Assembly: GCA_037447605.1 (NCBI GenBank)
Contig: CM074805.1
Coordinates: 2,141,361 to 2,205,360 of the forward strand
Reading direction: 5' to 3'
DNA from: Zygnema circumcarinatum SAG 698-1b
Lineage: Eukaryota > Plantae > Zygnematophyceae
DNA length: 64,000 nt
The notes beneath the pieces were generated by a model. It worked only from the letters and a program-made list of their open reading frames with translations. It did no database searches and had not been told where the DNA came from. This document shows positions 1,149 through 43,315 of this stretch, piece by piece (positions within the stretch are counted from its first letter, which is position 1; every line of letters begins with the position of its first letter). The position numbers and the translations under genes were made by a program.

Positions 1149-1939
1149 CCAAATCTTCAGTAGTTTTCCTGCGGCTGGGATGAAATCAGACCGTGTGCAC
1201 AGTCGATGAACAAAGCCAAACGAAGAGCTGCAAAAATTTGCAGCGATAATTAGGGTATCTTAACATTTTAGGTTTGAATCCGCCCTCCGAACGCTCTCTG
1301 CCCAAAACTCACAAGGCAGTCAGTCCCCATTCCCAGGCAGCAGGCAGGGTCCGCAGGGGGCTCTTCCGTACTCATTAGAAAGCAGGACCGTACCGTACCT
1401 TTTCGTTTCGTACAAACCAAGATCCATGCGCCGAAGTGAGATTTGTTTTGCGGAACAGCGAACTGGATATGTTTTTCACATAGATTTTGGATCGTCATTT
1501 GTTGCTTTCGATTAGAAATTTGACCACTTAAAGTATGCCACGTGGCATCGCACGTGTGTAACTTCCTTAAATGAGCAGCCACAGAGCCGCCGCCTGCCGT
1601 ACGGTCACGCTGGCTTCACGTGGGCGCGCGCTTGGCTTGTACGAATAGTTTGTCGGTTTGTTTGCCTTCGTACAACGCCGCCTGGGAGACAGGTGGCCGC
1701 CGCGTGAACGAAGGAGACGACAAACATTGACACGTGCGGCGTCAGACCATACGAGCGGACGACTTTCCGTACATAGGTGCTTGTACGGCAACGTGATGGA
1801 CTGTAGTAAATTATCGACACAGCATGCTCATGCGTGCGGCCGGGCTGGCGGGCACGGCCGGGCTGGCGGGCATGGCCGCATGAGGGCATGCTCCGAGGTC
1901 ACCATGACCAGTTCCGCGCCTCGAAAAGGGGCGCGGCGA

Positions 1940-5333: not shown

Positions 5334-7011
5334 GGAGTCAGACCAACACCACCAAAGAAAGACTTAAACGCCTGAGAAAAAAATGTAGTTTCCCTCGGGA
5401 ATGGAAGACTTCTGCAACGATTCCGTCCCTGTTTCCTCAGGTTTTTAGGTCTCACGATAATCCATCCATCTCTCACAGTCTCCACTGCGTTTCCTCCTGA
5501 CCTCGTCCCCATCCTCCATCTGCTCAGGTCATACGTGATAGGGCCAAATGCGACAAAGAAAAGGTATTCAACACCACAAGTCTGCTCCCGACACACATTC
5601 CCTTTCAATTTCTGTCTGCTCGAAGCACTGCACCCCCCTTCCGTGAGCACCACCCACAGCCGTCCCAACCAAGTCCCTTTCTCGCCCCTTTCCGTCCTCA
5701 CCACACCCTGAAACAGAAGCTCCTGCCCCACCTCTGCCTCCCGCCGACTTCCTAAGCAGCACAGCCGCCAGTCCTTCCTTCCTGCCTCTCTCCCACCACC
5801 AGCCTCTCCCCTCCCTCCCTGCCCTCAGTCATTCTCCTCTTAAAAAACCACCCCTCTGCTCCTGCTGCCCTTCCTCAAGGAACAAGAGGGAAGCAAGCCC
5901 TGGCACCTCCACAATCGGTACCGCGCAAAGGAGCCGATCACTGGCAGGCGGCCAGAAGAGTACTCATTTTAACGGAGTTTTTGCGTCGTCCGGTCGTCGG
6001 TGTACCGTGTGAATACCTTCCGGGCACCGCCCGACCGATCGGGTCCCGCACCCCTCCGGCCAATCGTGTGGCGCCGCGGCGCGTGCCGCCGTTGGAGACG
6101 CCACGTGTGGGGGGAGCGCGCACGCACGTGTGCGGCCCGCCTTTAAGCGCGGGAGGGCGGCCCGGCCAGGCCCGTCCCTGCCTCCGTCTGTCGGGCCGAC
6201 CGAGACGACACGGGGGACTGGGACTGGAACTTTGGCGGTCTCCATGCATTCAACAGTTCGACAGTTTCGAGCACAGTCTTTTCTTTTTTGAAGGCCTTGA
6301 AACTAGTAGAGGTTGAACAGTTTTTACTACGGGCTCTCAGAGAGTCAACAGAAGAGTGAGCTTAGCGCTCTGCAGATTCTTGAGTTGAGCTCTGCGTTGC
6401 TAGGCCATTGCGATGTGCTATAGTCGTACAGGACAGAAAGGGGAAAGACAATTGCTTCTCTGCGCTCATTGAAGAACTGCTTTTCGATTCTTTTTCGCTC
6501 AACTTGCAAATGTTTTCGTGATGCCTTTTGAGGGGCCGTTCGCCTCTCCAGCAGTCGTCATTCCTATAAAGAAAGCTTGAGAACCATTTTATTGCCTAAA
6601 GAACGCGGATAAAGAATGACCCCACTTGCCAAGTACTCCGAAACACACAGCACAGATCGCAAACCAATCCCTGACCCATGCTCTTTTCTCCTCCATGACG
6701 TATATATTCCCCCCCCCNNNNNNNNNNTTCCCCCCCCCCCCCCCCCCACCCAAAAAAAAAAAAACTGAAAATGCAAATACCCAAGCAACGTCCCTATGGC
6801 CACCCTATGTTTCCATCCCTCTCAAAGGCGAAATTAAGAAAAGTCACTCCCCCCAGTTGACCCCACGTCATGATGAGCATTTCCATAGTGGGCAAAAAGG
6901 TGCAAACACATTCACCAGTCCAGTCGACCATCGAGCATTTCAACTTGCACCAATGGGGATACAGATACTCAAGTCTCCTAGCCACAGACTGCTCTCTCAT
7001 GCCCCACCGCC

Positions 7012-20354: not shown

Positions 20355-20720
20355 GCTCCGTATTATACACTTTTAGGTTCGATACAATGTATAATACAGT
20401 ATTAATACTGTATTATACACTGTATAATACCTTAACGCAACTGTTAACAGCCGTACAATCGGAACATAGATATGTACGGAAATTATGTACGGAAGGGGTG
20501 TACCAGCATGTACGGACCAAGTCACACGTGTTGAGTGTTTGGCACGTGACGTGACTTGGCAAGTGCTGGAACTTCAATATTATAATCAATCTTTGTTCAA
20601 CTAAGCACGAAAATAAAATAAATACGTTAAATACATTTAAAATACACTGTATTTTTAAATGTTGTATAATACGCATGTATTATACAGTGTATTAATACAC
20701 GCGTTTGATACATACGGAGC
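20355..20720. mobile_element. Stowaway-like MITE (366 bp)
   Basis: TA|GCTCCGTAT...ATACGGAGC|TA. AT-rich interior with internal palindromes such as TACAGTATTAATACTGTA. Confidence 0.65.
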
Positions 20721-37130: not shown

Positions 37131-38034
37131 GGCTGCGACCGCCTCTATCCTCAAGTGCCCCTCGACTTTTACCCCTCCGCTCCAATTTTCCTTACTTTTG
37201 GCGTCGCTGCCCGCGGACAGAAAAAAAAGCGTTTGGGAGGGAACCAGGGAGCGACACGTGACGGCTAATGGCGATTTTGCATGGGATGACACGTGGCAGG
37301 CACAAGGCTACGGAGACATGTCACATGGAAAGACGGAGAATAGTCAAACGGAGAGACACGGAACTGTGTTCACAGAGTGTGCAGAAAACTGGCCCTGGCC
37401 CTGGCCCCTCGGGCCCTCAGGTGGGCGGGCGGCAGCCAGGAGCGAGGCGGTGGGGGGGGTCAACATGTGGCGGTTTGAGCGCTCGATGCGCCATAATTAC
37501 AAAATGAAAGTTATTTCTGAGGCTCCATTAGATTCACGTTTATTAGAAACTAAATGTAGCTTCAATTCAGAGAGGCGCAATGAAGAAAAAGAGCTTGAAG
37601 TCGATAAGTACTCATGGAATTTGCCTTTTTATTTCCAACCATGCATTAACTCGGTCGGTGCCTATGATCCCGAATGCTTCCCTGAAACCCTAATGAAATG
37701 CCCTCATGCTTCAGTAGCCCTCTTTTTCTAATGTTGCAGATGTCAGCAACAGAACTTTATTGCCGCAGCAAGCGCATGCATGCATGCAGGCAGCACACCC
37801 ACTAACGTGCCCCTCCCTCTACTCTGTGCCGAAATCGAATCGGACGGCTTCGCCATAGACGTCGCTCACTGCAAAACGGGTCTAAATAAATAAACTGCGT
37901 TCCAGGCTCTTCAGTAGACACGTTATTTGCTGCACCTCAAGACTGATAAGTGCAGACGCGGAACACTTCCAGCAGCAAAAGAGTGACGGGACAGTTGCGA
38001 GTGAAGGACTGTTTCACTCCCGCACTGTTCGCGC

Positions 38035-41000
38035 TCACTTCTTTCCGTTAAAGTTGCGGAATAAATGGAATACGTTCTGTTTGCGCCTCGCAGCAAACTT
38101 CTCCCTCAGCCTCATCTGGTCGATCATGTCGCTGGCATCCATGTATTCTAGCAGCTTCCTTCCCATGGTGCGCTTGCGGAAGACTATCTTCCTCACCATG
38201 CCGTGGACTCCCCAGTTGTTGTCAACGACCTGCGGAAGGTGGGGAAAAGTCGGTTCAGATTTTCTCCAGAGATCCATGAACGCTTAATCGAAGAGAACAT
38301 TTATATTAAAAAATAAATAAATAAATAAATAAAAAGACAGAAAGAGAAAGAGAGAGCAAAGGTTTTCAAAACACAGGAGAGCTTTTGAGTTCACTTTACC
38401 TGGGTCACTACAAAGTCCACCGAAGTGCTCATGACTCCAATGCTCTCCGTCTCCTGCAGGAGGAAGGCGTCCATCAGGAAATTGCGGGTCTTGTCGAATG
38501 CGCCGCGGAAGGCACGGTCCAGACTGGCTCCCGCCACGTTAATCGTAATAGGGCTCTCAAGTTCACTGAGGTAGTCGGTGTATGAGTATCCATGAATCAT
38601 ATACACCTGCAGCAGGAGGAAGAAAACCGAGGCGTAAGAATGGGAAACGGAGCAGTAGAACTGGCAGTTTGAAGCATAAGCAGAACATGCAAAACTCTTT
38701 TGCAGCAGTGCAGGTCATGGAACTCTTTTGATCATCAAAAAGGTGATAAGCTTACAAGGGCTGTTTCTCCAAGTGGAAAGTTGAGCATCTTGATGGATTG
38801 AGGGAGTGTCGCCTGCAGAACCATAGACCCGGCCCTAAGCAGTAAGTTCGGGTAAACTTCACTAAAACGTCATTGACTTTCTGCTTTGCGTGGCCATCAA
38901 TGCTGAGGGCTCGTCTCCCATGTCAGCACAAACATTTAGCAGTCGCATTACTTCACTTCGCACATAACGCATCCGTATAAGCTCCAAGCGATAGGTTTTG
39001 CAGAGTCTCTTATACACTGAAAACCTTGACAGCCTACGACCGGTTCTCCAAAAATATACTTACAGCGGGGAGGAGTGTTATGCGCAGCACGACAGTGTAC
39101 GATGTTTCAATGGCCGTCCCGGACAGCTCGCTGTCTCCTTGCGCTGCCAATGAAGCAGTCACAGGGGGAAGCTGTCAGACGCGCCATCAAAGTCTATCAT
39201 TTTTCGAATGCATATTGATCTTAGTGGTGTGTATCAACAAGTTTTGTCTTTCTCGTCCCACCTCCAAGGGTCTTCATGCTGCCTATCTTGAACTAGAAAA
39301 GGGTCACTAAACGCTCGGTATGCACCCGAAGGGTATATCATCAATCTAAGCATTTTAGACCCATCGGAGGTAAGAGCAGCGTTTGCAGACCTGCATGCGT
39401 GTCAGCGAGAACGAGCCTCGCGCCTTCGAGCTGAGCCTTGTAGTACATGGTAGTGCCTGTTGTGACGCGCCAATTGTCGATATTGCCTCCAAACCTGTAC
39501 AAGGAAAATACACATCATTTCAATCTACTCACCCTCTTGTGCTTGACACACTGCTGACATGTGTGGTTAAGCTTACTTCACAACAGCTTGAAAAGCTGCT
39601 ACCATTATGAGAGAGAGGAATTGGGGAGGAAGGGTTGGGGGAGGGAGAGAGAGAGTGGGGGGAGGGAGAGGGAGCAGTCGTACAGGCTGGGAGAGACGGT
39701 GCTGGCCCCTTTCGTGCCACTGGGAGCACCCACGAGGAAGTTCTGCCCGTTCGCAGGCATGACGGCTGCGCGGCCATAGCGAGGAGGTCACGCTCTGGTC
39801 AGTTTGGTTTAACCAGGCCAAAAAACCAAAAATCAACCACAAAGGGAAGTTGCGGGACGGCCGGGAGTCTGACAACTTACCCATAATGCCAATATGAGCG
39901 CGAAGCGGGATCTGGAATGCCAAACTAGCGTTGGTGTATGTGATGTTGGTCAGATTGTTTGCGAGAGCGAACTGGAAGCCAGGGAGGTATTTCACTGGTT
40001 TATTGCTTAATCCTGCGGCGCCAGGACATACTAACCACCGCCTTTCAGAAATGTTCCTCAAAAAATAGAACACATTGTGTCAAGTTCGCCATTCAGCATG
40101 CCGTGTGCTGAGTTCAGACATGGCAGACAAAGATAGCCAAGTGTCTAAAGAAGATGGGATTTTAGCGTTCACCCTTACCTATGTCAACTGGGTGGGGGGT
40201 GATGTAGCCGATGGGTTGTGTGGTGGGCGTGGTTGGTGGTGCAGAGTTAGAGGGATCAATAAGAGAGGGTTGCAGGAACTGAAGCGCAAGCAGGAAACGA
40301 AGAAAAGGAAGGAAGTACAGGAAGTATTAGTAATCGCACGCAAGCAGCTAAGGTGAAGCACAGAGAGCACTCGTGTTTTCCAATTCAAAGTTCGCCTAAG
40401 GGAAACAATAGACTCTTTATGACGACTGTTCCATAGAAACTGGGACTATACCTGATATACAGGGACTCCGTAGTATCCCTTGAGCACCGCGTCATACGTG
40501 ATGTGGTAGATAGTGATGGTGGAGGCATCTCCTGTGAAGTTTGTTCCATCGCGCTTACCTCCCCTGGTGTAGTGGTACCTGCAGGGGGGGTCAAGCAGGA
40601 GGCAAAGAAGTCACTTTCGGCGGATGAAAGATTCGTGTACTGAGATTTCTACTTTTTCCAAATCACAAGCAAACCATCAGTTGAGAACTGGGAAGAATTC
40701 GAAGTACTCCACGTACTAGCGTGGGACATTCCATTGAGTGCTGCTCTGATAACTGTTTCCAGAACGGAAAGGTGGAAACACATACCCAAAGTTTGTGAGA
40801 ACGTTTGCGCCATATGCCCTATTGGTCTTAGGATTCCTGCGAGGCGTCATCTTCAAAATTTCCACCTGCCCCATGCCTCACCATCACTTCAGTATTCGTG
40901 CTCCCCCCTTCCACACCGCCTTTGCGAAGCAACCTTAATCATACATCCAACGCTTCATTCAACTATCCTGCATACATAATATGTGCCGCCTCGTCTGCAA

Positions 41001-41825
41001 GGCACGGCTTTCTTCTGGACCCCATCGATGATACAAGGAGAGAGCATCACATTCTCATCCCATGTGCCATACATACCTGGACGACATCCCCCGGCATCGC
41101 TCCGCAGACGTTGATGGGCCCAGTCACAATATGCGAGCCGCTGGCAGGAGGCTTCGGCACGCTCTTGTTGCCGGCGGTTTCTCCTTGCATCCACTTGTAG
41201 ATGGACTCCAACCCCGGGTCTCCCTGCAGCCCCCCCAACCCACAAAGACAGATTGCATCAGATTGAATTCTCACCCTTTGATTGTCTGTTTCTTTGATTT
41301 TACCTAGCAACACTATCCAGGGATTGTAGCACAGAACCGCAGAGCAAGATAAAAATGCAGCTCCCAAGCCCACTTCAGCTCACAGAGCGAGAGATGCGTT
41401 AGCAGGAGTAAATCTCTCGATTAAGAGATCCCCTTCGAAGCGGGGTCAGGCCACACCTTGATCATCTTGCTGTAGTCAGCGCCCGCCGTGTGCGTCCCGA
41501 CCTCCACCGTGATGGTGTCCCCGCTCCGCACGTGCGCTGCAAAGGGGCGCGCCAAGTCGTAGTACCCCCACATCACCGTGTCCCTGCAGCACGCCCCGCT
41601 CAGGTAAGGAGGGAGGCCATGGATCGAGCAGGGCCTCGCACGGCAGCAGAGGTATTCACAAGGCATCAAACAACTAAAGGCCATGGCGGTTGCTTACTTG
41701 TTAATTGGGAGGTACTCCGTGCTGGGGCCCATGCACGTCCCCGGCTGGGCTGCTGACAGCAGGGGGAAGGCGAGCAGCAGAGCCGCAGCGAGGAGAGCCA
41801 TAGTGGGGCTGCCAGCTGCCGCCAT
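38035..41825 (-). CDS. Acetamidase/formamidase (FmdA/AmdA family) with N-terminal signal peptide, ~11 exons
   Basis: MAAAGSPTMALLAAALLLAFPLLSAAQ..|DTVMWGYY..VRSGDTITVEVGTH..MIK|GDPGLESIYKW..GSHIVTGPINVCGAMPGDVVQ|VEIL..|..|FQIPLRAHIGIMG|..FGGNIDNWRVTTGTTMYY..VLADTHA|AQGDSELSGTAIETS|..SLDRAF..VDFVVTQ|VVDNNWGVHGMVRK..*. Confidence 0.9.
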
Positions 41826-42087
41826 GGCGAGGTCAGGTGAGGCGAGCCGAGGCGAGCCGAGAGCAGAGGAGAGGAGGCACGTAGCGCTGAGAGAAGTCTC
41901 CCTCCTACCGGCCTCGCCCTATCCTTATAGGCCCCCAGCCAGGCCCAAGCCATGCCCAGGCCAGGGCCCGGCAGTGGCGGGGAGTGGCGGAGGGAGTGTG
42001 GCGGCGGCGCGCTCCGACTCTGACAAGGGCCGACGGTGCGATGTCGGCGCGGCCCCGCACCGACATGCCGCGGCCGCGGGGAGTGGG

Positions 42088-42121
42088 CCACGTGGGCCAA
42101 CGCGCCACGTGGGATCACGTG
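42088..42121. promoter_or_regulatory. Triple G-box (CACGTG x3) upstream of the amidase gene
   Basis: CCACGTGG at 42088 and 42105, CACGTG at 42116, about 265-295 bp upstream of the ATG. TATAAG on the minus strand at ~41925. Confidence 0.55.
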
Positions 42122-42599
42122 GACGTCGCGCAGCCAATGGAGGGAGCGGGCGGGCGGGCGGGCGGGGGCGTCACCTCCCCCAAGTACCGGCACGCGGCGG
42201 GGCAGGTCCACCTACAGGCGGCTGCCGCCGTTGGATTCGGAGATCCGACGGCGAAAGATGCGCCAACGTTCTGCGGACAAATGCGGCCGCCGCCTGCGCC
42301 GGCTCGTCGCATCCGGGGAAGGGGCATTCTGGCAGGCTGCGTACGGAGGCCGCGGTGTGGGGACACGTGGTGCACGAAAGGTCGGGCCGCGGCAGCAGTC
42401 GATATCGAGGAAGCTTCGTCAGTACGGCGCCTGGGAACTGCAGATGGAGTTCTATGGAGGCGGGCGGCGTCTATGGCCTCACAGTTCCGTGCAAAATTCC
42501 ACAAGTTACTGAACTGGCGGCGGGCACCTGGAACTGGTTAGAACGAGTCGATTGCTAGCCGGGCTTGGCTGGGACAACTCTCCCAAAAAAAATAAACAA

Positions 42600-43315
42600 G
42601 GAAAATGATACTTCGCCCCCTTTTTTTTGAAATCCCGCCCTCCCATTTTGGCTATTCCGCCCTCTGTTTTGGATATCCCGCCCTTCCCCATTTTGGATAT
42701 TCACCCCCCTGTTTTCTCCTTCTCACATATCAGCGCAACGTCCGTAAAGACATTCGCAGAGAGAGAGCAGAGCAGGGGAGAGAGAGTGAGAGAGAGCAGA
42801 GAGAGCAGAGGAGAGAGAGCGCAGAGGAGAGAGAGAGAGCAGAGGAGAGAGAGAGAGAGAGAGAGAGATAGAGAGAGGGTAGAGGATAGAGCAGAGGAAC
42901 AGAGGAGAGAGAGAAGAAGAGAGGGAAAGCAGAGGAGAGAGAGCAGAGGAGAGAGAGAGTAGAGGAGAGAGAGAGAGAGAAAGAAAGCAAGTAGGCCAAT
43001 CATTACATCATCACAGAGCTTCACACCCACCGCAAAATATGAACAAAAAGAGAATAAAAAGTTCCTAAATATAGAAAAACTCGACAAAGTGTCTGCGCAT
43101 TTGAAGCCTACAAGCTGCCAAACTAGTTACACCTAAGAGTCTAACGTGGGGTCTAGAGTACAAATCTACATTGCTGGAGCCAGCCTGCCAGAATACATAT
43201 GGGGGGGGGGGGGGGGGGGGGGNNNNNNNNNNGTAAATAGCCAAAATGGGAGGGCGGGATTTCAAAAAAAATGGGGCGGGATAACCCCAAAAGGGGGGGG
43301 GGTGTATCATTTTCC
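42600..43315. mobile_element. Non-autonomous TIR element, Mutator-like, with internal (GA)-rich block and a poly-G/assembly gap
   Basis: GGAAAATGATAC...TTTTTTTGAAATCCCGCCCTCCCATTTTGGCTAT (42600-42656) is inverted at 43237-43315 (ATAGCCAAAATGGGAGGGCGGGATTTCAAAAAAA...GTATCATTTTCC). No clean TSD seen. Confidence 0.6.

What the first reader, a model, noticed from the sequence alone, without database searches (positions are those of the whole stretch)
38035..41825. Secreted, intron-rich acetamidase/formamidase of bacterial type
Seen: exon 1 encodes a classical signal peptide (MALLAAALLLAFPLLSAAQ) spliced in frame to the FmdA/AmdA domain. A Pro/Thr-rich insert (APPTTPTTQP) resembles an O-glycosylated linker. 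Established: characterised plant formamidases are soluble cytosolic enzymes. From memory, the motif set (WGYY..SGD.IT.E..TH, MIKGDPG.ESI..W, GGNIDNWR, QGDSEL.GTAIE.S, VD.NWGVH) resembles a bacterial subfamily more than the angiosperm enzyme. Inference: an old horizontally acquired gene domesticated, with about ten introns and a triple G-box, for extracellular scavenging of amide nitrogen.
Basis: partly seen in the sequence, partly recalled or inferred. Interest (0 to 1): 0.75.

Follow-up and report, generated by a model that had tools for sequence, protein, structure and literature searches.

The report
Signal-peptide amidase gene of an alga
This is an expressed, 13-exon nuclear gene of a green alga close to land plants. 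It encodes an acetamidase/formamidase-family enzyme with a secretion leader, and it belongs to an old, little-studied algal clade that I did not find in land plants, so it is a sound but fairly ordinary new family member.

Summary
A minus-strand gene (41825..38035) has 13 exons and 12 GT-AG introns and encodes 521 aa. Spliced contigs in four public runs (three studies) confirm every intron, including the exon 1-exon 2 joint.

The protein belongs to the FmdA/AmdA family but not to the canonical formamidase type. Its solved relative is 3b9t, an uncharacterised Methylobacillus protein deposited as a "Tat pathway signal protein": an orthologue scores 300 bits against it and 55 bits against formamidase-type 2wkn.

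Full-length orthologues (61-70% identical) come from Mesotaenium, Spirogloea and two algal transcriptomes. Further relatives occur in Klebsormidium, Chlorokybus, chlorophytes, diatoms, pelagophytes and Vitrella. No embryophyte appears among the best hits.

The core eukaryotic sequences form one clade (100/100) with shared indels and a shared C-terminal extension. The window gene nests among Zygnematophyceae, and four of its intron positions are shared with a Klebsormidium gene. The gene is therefore old and vertically inherited in streptophytes. A bacterial origin is plausible, but the tree has no root.

Entry into the secretory pathway is well supported. An extracellular role in scavenging amide nitrogen is only inferred.

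The "Pro/Thr insert" is a variable loop, not an insert. The triple G-box is real but untested.

The parts
38035..41825 (-). Coding span of the gene, start codon to stop codon: 13 exons, 12 GT-AG introns, 521 aa
   Evidence: Model. All joints are confirmed by spliced contigs.
41698..41825 (-). Exon 1: start codon, signal-like peptide (residues 1-26) and the mature N-terminus QPGTCMGPSTEYLPIN
   Evidence: The orthologue P0096 resumes with QPGTCVGPST right after its own hydrophobic leader.
41748..41825 (-). Predicted signal peptide: uncharged n-region, h-region ALLAAALLLAFPLL, c-region SAA, inferred cleavage A26|Q27
   Evidence: Hydropathy peaks at 2.8 over residues 10-20 and there is no other membrane-like segment. 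SignalP was not available.
41826..41902 (-). 5' UTR as far as the contigs reach; it contains no upstream ATG
   Evidence: Contig ends lie at 41867-41902. Sequence check.
41457..41583 (-). Exon 2 (WGYYD...SGDTITVEVGTH...MIK)
41077..41223 (-). Exon 3 (GDPGLESIYKW...HIVTGPINVCGAMPGD). Carries Cys125 (41104-41106) and the N104 sequon
   Evidence: Pfam FmdA_AmdA weak hit, 17 bits; 3b9t E=0.003
40786..40865 (-). Exon 4
40452..40578 (-). Exon 5
40179..40278 (-). Exon 6. Contains the Pro/Thr-rich loop APPTTPTTQP (40213-40242)
   Evidence: The loop aligns with equal-length loops in homologues.
39881..40012 (-). Exon 7: eukaryote-specific insertion with three N-glycosylation sequons (N256, N259, N264)
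39684..39765 (-). Exon 8 (second eukaryote-specific insertion, NGQNFLVGAPSGTKG)
39391..39494 (-). Exon 9 (GGNIDNWR ... ADTHA)
   Evidence: Pfam FmdA_AmdA weak hit, 14.5 bits, collinear with exon 3
39064..39143 (-). Exon 10 (AQGDSELSGTAIETS)
38756..38812 (-). Exon 11
38400..38606 (-). Exon 12: the longest exon, used as the search query
   Evidence: 3b9t E=6e-10. 91 hits in 1.84 billion representatives.
38035..38229 (-). Exon 13: VVDNNWGVH, then the eukaryote-specific C-terminal extension (residues ~478-521, 38038-38169) with the GRKLLEY motif, then the stop codon
   Evidence: The extension is predicted helical in the Mesotaenium orthologue.
37600..38034 (-). 3' UTR. It is covered to the edge of the stretch laid, and contig lengths imply it runs on to about 37300-37480
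   Evidence: table 8
42089..42121 (.). Three CACGTG (G-box cores) within 33 bp, about 190-240 bp upstream of the transcript 5' ends
   Evidence: Function not tested.

Best explanation
The locus is an expressed nuclear gene of a streptophyte alga. Judged from the gene tree, the alga is most likely a zygnematophyte.

The gene encodes a 521-aa amidohydrolase of the acetamidase/formamidase (FmdA_AmdA) family. It belongs to the subfamily whose bacterial members carry Sec or Tat export leaders and whose only solved structure is the uncharacterised 3b9t.

The protein starts with a cleavable-looking signal peptide, so it should enter the ER. The mature part has exactly two cysteines, and these covary across the family as a disulfide pair would. 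It also has five N-glycosylation sequons and no retention signal, second membrane segment or GPI-type tail. It therefore most likely ends up outside the cell, in the wall or the medium, or less likely in the vacuole.

The family's conserved motif residues are intact, so the protein is probably an active hydrolase of small amides that releases ammonium. That would fit scavenging of organic nitrogen.

The gene is an old resident of algal genomes, inherited vertically within streptophytes, and was not found in land plants.

Shown here: gene structure, splicing, family and subfamily, clade membership, age.
Inferred: cleavage site, disulfide, glycosylation, final location, substrate, physiological role.
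For: Gene and transcript:
- 13 exons, all GT-AG.
- All 12 joints are present in spliced contigs of 4 runs from 3 studies.

Family:
- Exons 3 and 9 give weak, collinear PF03069 hits.
- Orthologue P0002 (61% identical over residues 31-514) scores 98.9 bits on PF03069.
- The joined model, kept local, scores 648 bits on a profile of the subfamily and 343 bits on a bacteria-only profile.
- 83 of 93 columns that are at least 95% conserved are kept, including H116, D131, N312, D314, D339, H341, Q344-G345-D346 and E348.
- The predicted structure of the Mesotaenium orthologue (pLDDT 83) matches 3b9t at TM 0.83 and other acetamidases at lower scores.

Subfamily:
- Exon 12 hits only 3b9t in the PDB, at E=6e-10.
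- P0002 scores 300 bits on 3b9t and 55 bits on 2wkn.

Export:
- The hydrophobic leader has small residues at -3 and -1.
- Every full-length streptophyte orthologue has a non-conserved hydrophobic leader, and sequence conservation resumes at QPGTC.
- 76 of 96 bacterial members have a hydrophobic leader, and 22 have a twin-arginine-like motif.
- The Cys31/Cys125 pair in bacterial homologues: both present in 56, both absent in 108, Cys125 alone in 0.
- The window protein has 5 sequons against a bacterial mean of 0.9.
- Klebsormidium paralogues carry Ser/Ala/Pro-rich stretches directly after the leader.

Age:
- The core eukaryotic clade has 100/100 support, Zygnematophyceae 100/99, and the window gene with P0096 100/98.
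- The eukaryotic sequences share indels and a C-terminal extension.
- 4 of the 12 introns share column and phase with a Klebsormidium nitens gene, where about 0.1 would be expected by chance.

Role (indirect):
- Acetamidase/formamidase transcripts are among the top nitrogen-limitation genes in Klebsormidium flaccidum (PMC12540246).
- Two genes of a 'poorly characterized clade' of this family are strongly induced by nitrogen deprivation in Phaeodactylum (PMC4588885).
Against: - No signal-peptide predictor, proteomics or localisation data were available. The n-region of the leader has no basic residue.
- The disulfide rests on covariation among related sequences. I had no coordinates to measure the distance between the two cysteines.
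- No member of the 3b9t-type subfamily has a known substrate.
- Bacterial gene neighbourhoods are variable and gave no clue.
- I could not confirm that the nitrogen-responsive Klebsormidium flaccidum and Phaeodactylum transcripts belong to this clade.
- The basic, helical C-terminal extension of about 45 residues is unexplained. It could redirect the protein, for instance to the vacuole, or attach it to something.
- The runs are not on record as RNA. That the contigs are RNA-derived is inferred from their spliced form.
Confidence: 0.62

Rival explanations
1. The gene and enzyme are the same, but the protein is not secreted. The signal peptide takes it into the ER, and the conserved basic, helical C-terminal extension (GRKLLEY...) then sorts it to the vacuole or another endomembrane compartment. 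There it would recycle internal amide nitrogen.
For: The C-terminal extension is present in all core eukaryotic members and absent from bacteria. It is predicted helical. The Phaeodactylum paper leaves open an intracellular or an extracellular source of amides.
Against: The extension contains no recognised sorting motif. Klebsormidium paralogues have Ser/Ala/Pro-rich stretches typical of wall glycoproteins. The bacterial homologues are exported to the periplasm, which is an extracytoplasmic setting.
Confidence: 0.2
2. The clade came from the cyanobacterial ancestor of plastids by endosymbiotic gene transfer, and reached diatoms, pelagophytes and Vitrella through secondary plastids. On this view it was not a separate horizontal transfer from soil bacteria.
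For: All identified eukaryotic carriers are photosynthetic lineages. In the unrooted tree the eukaryotes attach next to a small bacterial group that holds Leptolyngbya PCC 6406, Nodosilinea and Paenibacillus. That group, like the eukaryotes, lacks the 16-19-residue loop that most bacteria have.
Against: The tree has no outgroup, and the polarity of the loop character is unknown. Cyanobacterial sequences fall in two separate places among proteobacteria, so they look like recipients of transfer themselves. Only filamentous Leptolyngbya-like cyanobacteria carry the gene. Apatococcus, together with an unidentified sequence, forms a separate lineage.
Confidence: 0.2
3. The enzyme does not act on formamide or acetamide. 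It is an exported hydrolase for another amide-type substrate, such as amino-acid amides, lactams, or wall- or peptide-derived amides. In that case the nitrogen-scavenging story would be incidental.
For: The subfamily shares only about 55 bits with characterised formamidase-type proteins. Family members are reported to act on lactams and aliphatic amides, and some are linked to uptake of amino-acid amides (bioRxiv 10.1101/2024.02.22.581678). The eukaryote-specific insertions may reshape the surface of the protein.
Against: The family motif residues are conserved. Transcripts of the family respond to nitrogen limitation in two algae, although membership of this clade was not verified.
Confidence: 0.3
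4. The gene is bacterial contamination or a recent transfer into this one genome.
For: The nearest solved structure and many database hits are bacterial.
Against: The gene has 12 spliceosomal introns, all confirmed in transcripts. Its closest relatives, at 61-70% identity, are zygnematophyte proteins, while bacteria are 36-42% identical. Intron positions are shared with Klebsormidium. The gene lies between eukaryotic features in the window.
Confidence: 0.01

Closest known systems
PDB 3b9t, predicted acetamidase/formamidase YP_546212.1 of Methylobacillus flagellatus KT (molecule name 'Twin-arginine translocation pathway signal protein')
   Same: Same subfamily and fold. Exon 12 matches it at E=6e-10. 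Orthologue P0002 scores 300 bits. The orthologue model aligns at TM 0.83 and 36% identity. Both proteins carry an export leader.
   Different: The bacterial protein has a Tat-type leader, a loop 16-19 residues longer after GDPG..W, no eukaryote-type insertions and no C-terminal extension. It is itself functionally uncharacterised.
Annotated 'acetamidase/formamidase' proteins of streptophyte algae: Mesotaenium ME000248S04250 and ME000448S07414, Spirogloea SM000053S17414, and six Klebsormidium nitens proteins
   Same: They are orthologues or paralogues at 52-64% identity over nearly the full length. They share the signal-like leaders, the insertions and the RKLLE C-terminal extension. Four intron positions are shared with K. 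nitens P0098.
   Different: They are different species. Klebsormidium copies add Ser/Ala/Pro-rich linkers after the leader. None of them has been studied experimentally in any paper I could find.
Canonical FmdA-type formamidases (Methylophilus FmdA, Aspergillus FmdS, Arabidopsis and lupin formamidase; structural representative 2wkn)
   Same: Same Pfam family PF03069, with the shared core motifs around HxxTGP, GGN.D and QGD.E.
   Different: The relationship is distant: 55 bits against 300 for 3b9t, and TM 0.37-0.46. From my own knowledge these enzymes have no leader peptide.
[quoted passage not shown]
   Same: Diatom members of the present clade exist: Amphora, Fistulifera, Seminavis and Cylindrotheca. 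The paper's description fits, and those genes are strongly induced by nitrogen deprivation.
   Different: I could not verify that these two Phaeodactylum genes belong to the same clade. No Phaeodactylum name appeared among the listed hits.

Membership tests
Acetamidase/formamidase family (Pfam PF03069 FmdA_AmdA) | Match to the family profile above the curated cut-off (27 bits) | tested here: inconclusive
Taken exon by exon, only exon 3 (17 bits) and exon 9 (14.5 bits) hit, collinearly and below the cut-off. Orthologue P0002 (61% identical) scores 98.9 bits. The joined model, kept local, scores 648 bits on a profile built from PF03069-annotated relatives.
Acetamidase/formamidase family (Pfam PF03069 FmdA_AmdA) | Conserved core motif residues (HxxTGP, GGNxD, DxHxxQGDxE, VDxNWGxH) | tested here: met
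   83 of 93 columns that are at least 95% conserved are kept. The 10 that differ are mostly glycines in loops.
Acetamidase/formamidase family (Pfam PF03069 FmdA_AmdA) | Family fold | tested here: met
   Tested on the Mesotaenium orthologue (64% identical), not on the window protein itself. The model has pLDDT 83 and pTM 0.85. Foldseek matches 3b9t, 5ubu, 3tkk, 2ii1, 2f4l and 2wkn, all at probability 1.00.
Acetamidase/formamidase family (Pfam PF03069 FmdA_AmdA) | Amide hydrolase activity | not testable with these tools
   This needs an enzyme assay.
Exported 3b9t-type subfamily | Closer to 3b9t than to any other solved family member | tested here: met
   Exon 12 hits only 3b9t. Exon 3 scores 0.003 on 3b9t against 0.73 on 2wkn. 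P0002 scores 300 bits against at most 61 bits for the others.
Exported 3b9t-type subfamily | N-terminal export leader | tested here: met
   Judged by a heuristic only: the hydrophobic core is ALLAAALLLAFPLL, with Ser at -3 and Ala at -1. Orthologues and 76 of 96 bacterial members have leaders. SignalP was not run.
Canonical FmdA-type formamidase (plant, fungal, Methylophilus) | Nests with, or is most similar to, canonical formamidases | tested here: not met
   The orthologue scores 55 bits on 2wkn against 300 on 3b9t. No embryophyte protein appears among the best 120 hits of two searches. A joint tree with plant enzymes could not be built, because no such sequence was available.
Core eukaryotic (algal) clade of the subfamily | Shared insertions, shared short loop and RKLLE-type C-terminal extension; falls on one side of a supported branch | tested here: met
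   Alignments. Tree support is 100/100.

The most novel reading that the evidence does not exclude
An algal-wide clade of secretory-pathway amidases of bacterial, possibly cyanobacterial, descent was present in the earliest streptophytes. Klebsormidium and the zygnematophytes kept it and land plants lost it. It would give these algae extracellular access to amide nitrogen, or to a still unknown amide substrate, through a eukaryote-specific C-terminal module whose function is unknown.
Probability: 0.3. Interest if true: 0.5.

Novelty: new member of a known kind. Interest (0 to 1): 0.38.

Why it matters
If the protein is exported and active, streptophyte algae close to land plants have an extracellular route to organic amide nitrogen that land plants appear to have given up. 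That bears on how nitrogen nutrition changed when plants moved onto land.

The whole 3b9t-type subfamily, bacterial and algal, has no known substrate. An expressed eukaryotic member with clear orthologues in culturable algae (Mesotaenium, Klebsormidium, diatoms) is a practical way in.

The gene is not a surprise for specialists. Its relatives are already annotated as acetamidase/formamidase, and a diatom paper has already noted a 'poorly characterized clade'.

Tried and rejected
1. Pfam scans exon by exon gave only two sub-threshold hits. Family assignment had to go through orthologues and a local profile.
2. Searches failed on reference syntax and were repeated correctly.
3. I looked at bacterial gene neighbourhoods for a substrate clue. 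The neighbours vary: a phosphoribosyltransferase, a VWA protein, an M48 peptidase, a chemoreceptor, an FAD enzyme, and once a copper amine oxidase. No conclusion follows.
4. I tried to root the tree with the most distant hits. The AraC-fusion proteins and P0048 fall inside the bacterial clade, and P0034 pairs with Apatococcus. There is therefore no outgroup, and the direction of transfer stays open.
5. I tried to link the clade to the nitrogen-induced Phaeodactylum genes by searching with the Amphora protein. No Phaeodactylum entry was named.
6. Literature searches for this clade in streptophytes, for a secreted algal formamidase and for a reported transfer found nothing specific.
7. Contamination or a recent transfer is rejected by the introns, the transcripts and the orthologues.
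8. The reading of APPTTPTTQP as an inserted linker is rejected, because the loop has the same length in homologues.
9. There is no paralogue in the window and no evident divergent gene that would share the promoter.
10. The joined 521-aa protein was used only in local scripts. It was never sent to a database, structure or family tool.
Full report
**Observation**

The minus strand between 41825 and 38035 holds a clean 13-exon gene. I placed exon ends by reading frame and splice consensus.
- Exons: 41825-41698, 41583-41457, 41223-41077, 40865-40786, 40578-40452, 40278-40179, 40012-39881, 39765-39684, 39494-39391, 39143-39064, 38812-38756, 38606-38400, 38229-38035.
- Every intron is GT..AG, and the CDS is 1566 nt (521 aa).

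I laid the contigs of four public runs (three studies) on 37600-42300.
- All twelve joints appeared at these coordinates without mismatches, including exon 1 to exon 2 (41582->41697).
- The contigs start at 41867-41902 and run past 37600 in the 3' UTR.
- A few low-depth contigs retain introns, as pre-mRNA would.
- The runs are not on record as RNA. I infer that they are RNA-derived from the spliced form and from the share of words held (0.35-0.39, about the exonic share).

The first ATG of the transcript is at 41825, in a GCCATGG context. The 77-nt leader has no ATG.

**Family**

Single exons give only weak PF03069 hits: exon 3 at 17 bits and exon 9 at 14.5 bits, collinear with each other. Against solved structures:
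- exon 12 hits only 3b9t, at E=6e-10;
- exon 3 prefers 3b9t (0.003) over the formamidase-type 2wkn (0.73).

A search of 1.84 billion representatives with exon 12 found only 91 proteins at E<=0.001, some of them full length.
- Compared locally, the joined model is 61% identical to P0002 over residues 31-514.
- It is 70% identical to P0096, 64% to P0094 and 62% to P0093.
- P0002 scores 98.9 bits on PF03069, 300 bits on 3b9t and at most 61 bits on the other solved family members, with 2wkn at 55 bits.
- The joined model scores 648 bits on a local profile of the subfamily and 343 bits on a bacteria-only profile.
- It keeps 83 of 93 highly conserved columns, including the HxxTGP, GGNxD and DxHxxQGDxE motifs.
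- An AlphaFold model of the Mesotaenium orthologue (pLDDT 83) matches 3b9t at TM 0.83 and the other acetamidases less well.

The protein is therefore an FmdA/AmdA-family member of the 3b9t type, not of the canonical formamidase type.

**Who else has it**

The sources name P0002 as Spirogloea muscicola SM000053S17414, and P0094 and P0095 as Mesotaenium endlicherianum proteins. P0093 and P0096 come from transcriptome contigs (ERR2041114, SRR8128907). Other carriers:
- Klebsormidium nitens, with six copies;
- Chlorokybus;
- the chlorophytes Prasinocladus and Apatococcus;
- diatoms (Amphora, Fistulifera, Seminavis, Cylindrotheca);
- Pelagophyceae sp. CCMP2097;
- Vitrella.

No embryophyte protein appears among the best 120 hits of either search. 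After the algae the lists pass directly to bacteria at 36-42% identity: Methylobacterium, Methylophilus, Methylophaga, Bradyrhizobium, Variovorax and Leptolyngbya-like cyanobacteria.

**Phylogeny and age**

A careful maximum-likelihood tree of 72 rows gave these supports (the quick tree of 104 rows agrees):
- the core eukaryotic sequences on one side of a branch, 100/100;
- Zygnematophyceae, 100/99;
- the window gene with P0096, 100/98;
- Klebsormidium plus Zygnematophyceae, 98/89.

The partial Chlorokybus sequence groups weakly (94/78) with the ochrophyte branch instead, so the streptophyte sequences are not one clade in the best tree. No well-supported branch forces that split.

The eukaryotes share four features absent from most or all bacteria:
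- two insertions (about 25-45 and 13 residues);
- a short loop after GDPG..W;
- a C-terminal extension with an R-K-L-L-E-type motif.

I mapped the introns of K. nitens P0098 (14 introns) by exact spliced matching.
- Four introns coincide in alignment column and phase with four of the window gene's twelve (after residues 85, 134, 160 and 280).
- A fifth lies within one codon.
- About 0.1 coincidences would be expected by chance.

The gene was therefore already intron-bearing in the common ancestor of Klebsormidium and zygnematophytes, and it has been inherited vertically since. 'Old and domesticated' is supported.

'Horizontally acquired from bacteria' is plausible, because the family is mostly bacterial and the eukaryotic clade is confined to algae. 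It is not shown. None of my candidate outgroups fell outside the bacterial clade, so the tree has no root.

In the unrooted tree the eukaryotes attach next to a small group made of Leptolyngbya PCC 6406, Nodosilinea and Paenibacillus. That group shares the short loop. This keeps a cyanobacterial, even endosymbiotic, origin open as a rival.

**Export**

No signal-peptide predictor was available. The case rests on six points.
1. The leader has a 14-residue hydrophobic core, small residues at -3 and -1, and the protein has no other membrane-like segment.
2. Every full-length streptophyte orthologue has a hydrophobic leader that is not conserved in sequence. Conservation begins just after it. In P0096 the true ORF starts upstream of the called start and reads ...CHVES|QPGTCVGPST, against ...LSAA|QPGTCMGPST here.
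3. Most bacterial members have leaders, and some carry twin-arginine motifs. The 3b9t depositors named it a Tat signal protein.
4. The mature protein has exactly two cysteines, C31 and C125. Among bacterial homologues both are present in 56 and both absent in 108. C125 alone never occurs, and the eight with only an N-terminal Cys include untrimmed upstream translations. This is the pattern of a disulfide, which suits an oxidising compartment. The sequences are related to one another, so it is suggestive, not proof.
5. The window protein has five N-glycosylation sequons against a bacterial mean of 0.9.
6. Klebsormidium paralogues carry Ser/Ala/Pro-rich stretches right after the leader, as wall glycoproteins do.

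There is no KDEL/HDEL signal and no hydrophobic C-terminal tail. Entry into the secretory pathway is likely, about 0.8. The final destination, whether medium or wall or vacuole, is open. The unexplained C-terminal extension, helical in the model, may matter for it.

APPTTPTTQP (residues 216-225, exon 6) aligns with GGTTAVITTQP in Mesotaenium and with an equally long loop in bacteria. It is a Thr/Pro-rich variable loop, not an inserted linker.

The three CACGTG at 42089-42121 are real. The motif is also enriched across the whole window (36 sites against 13.5 expected) and clusters at several other places, so it looks like a general promoter feature of this genome. Nothing here tests its function. 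No divergent gene is evident upstream, and the window holds no paralogue.

**Function**

The substrate is unknown for the whole subfamily, and bacterial neighbourhoods are inconsistent. Indirect support for nitrogen scavenging comes from two papers.
- In Klebsormidium flaccidum, three acetamidase/formamidase transcripts are among the 50 transcripts most strongly regulated under nitrogen limitation (PMC12540246).

I could not confirm that those transcripts belong to this clade. Other family members act on lactams or are linked to amino-acid amides, so a different amide substrate remains possible.

**Novelty and verdict**

Relatives are already annotated as acetamidase/formamidase, and a diatom paper has noted the odd clade. 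I found no paper on its secretion leader, its distribution in streptophytes or its absence from land plants.

This is a new member of a known kind with some unexplored biology, and its interest is moderate to low.

**Rule compliance**

The joined spliced protein was used only in local scripts. Remote searches used exon references or database orthologues.

Noticed in passing
P0069, P0084, P0086, P0088, P0028 (database proteins): Several bacterial representatives of 554-798 aa combine an AraC-type regulator (AraC_binding_2 + HTH_18) with the FmdA_AmdA domain in one predicted protein. This is either a real fusion or adjacent genes called together.
   Followed up: partly
P0215 (Vitrella brassicaformis, 972 aa): The Vitrella member is about twice the normal length and behaves as a tandem duplication of the domain. 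Both halves sit on very long branches.
   Followed up: partly
P0297, P0300, L072 (Paenibacillus); L068:1-1209 (Leptolyngbya PCC 6406): Paenibacillus members carry a C-terminal copper-amine-oxidase-N1-type domain (PF07833). In Leptolyngbya PCC 6406 the gene lies directly downstream of a copper amine oxidase. This may hint at amine or amide metabolism outside the cytoplasm.
   Followed up: no
P0097, P0099 (Klebsormidium nitens): Right after the signal-like leader these paralogues have long Ser/Ala/Pro-rich repeats (for example APSAPADAPSAP...), which resemble arabinogalactan- or extensin-type linkers.
   Followed up: no
window 1539-1736, 6102-6130, 20525-20548, 37255-37295, 42089-42121: CACGTG is about 2.7-fold enriched in the window (36 sites against 13.5 expected) and occurs in tight clusters at several places besides this promoter.
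   Followed up: no
window 38783-39092 and 39467-39680: Low-depth contigs retain the intron between exons 10 and 11 and part of the intron between exons 8 and 9, as unspliced pre-mRNA would.
   Followed up: no
window about 43200-43230: A translated ORF shows a run of X, so there is a short run of N, an assembly gap, upstream of the gene. It is flanked by simple GA/CT-rich repeats at 42600-43100.
   Followed up: no
window 37300-38034: The 3' UTR implied by the contig lengths is long, roughly 560-720 nt. I did not check whether it overlaps a neighbouring transcript.
   Followed up: no
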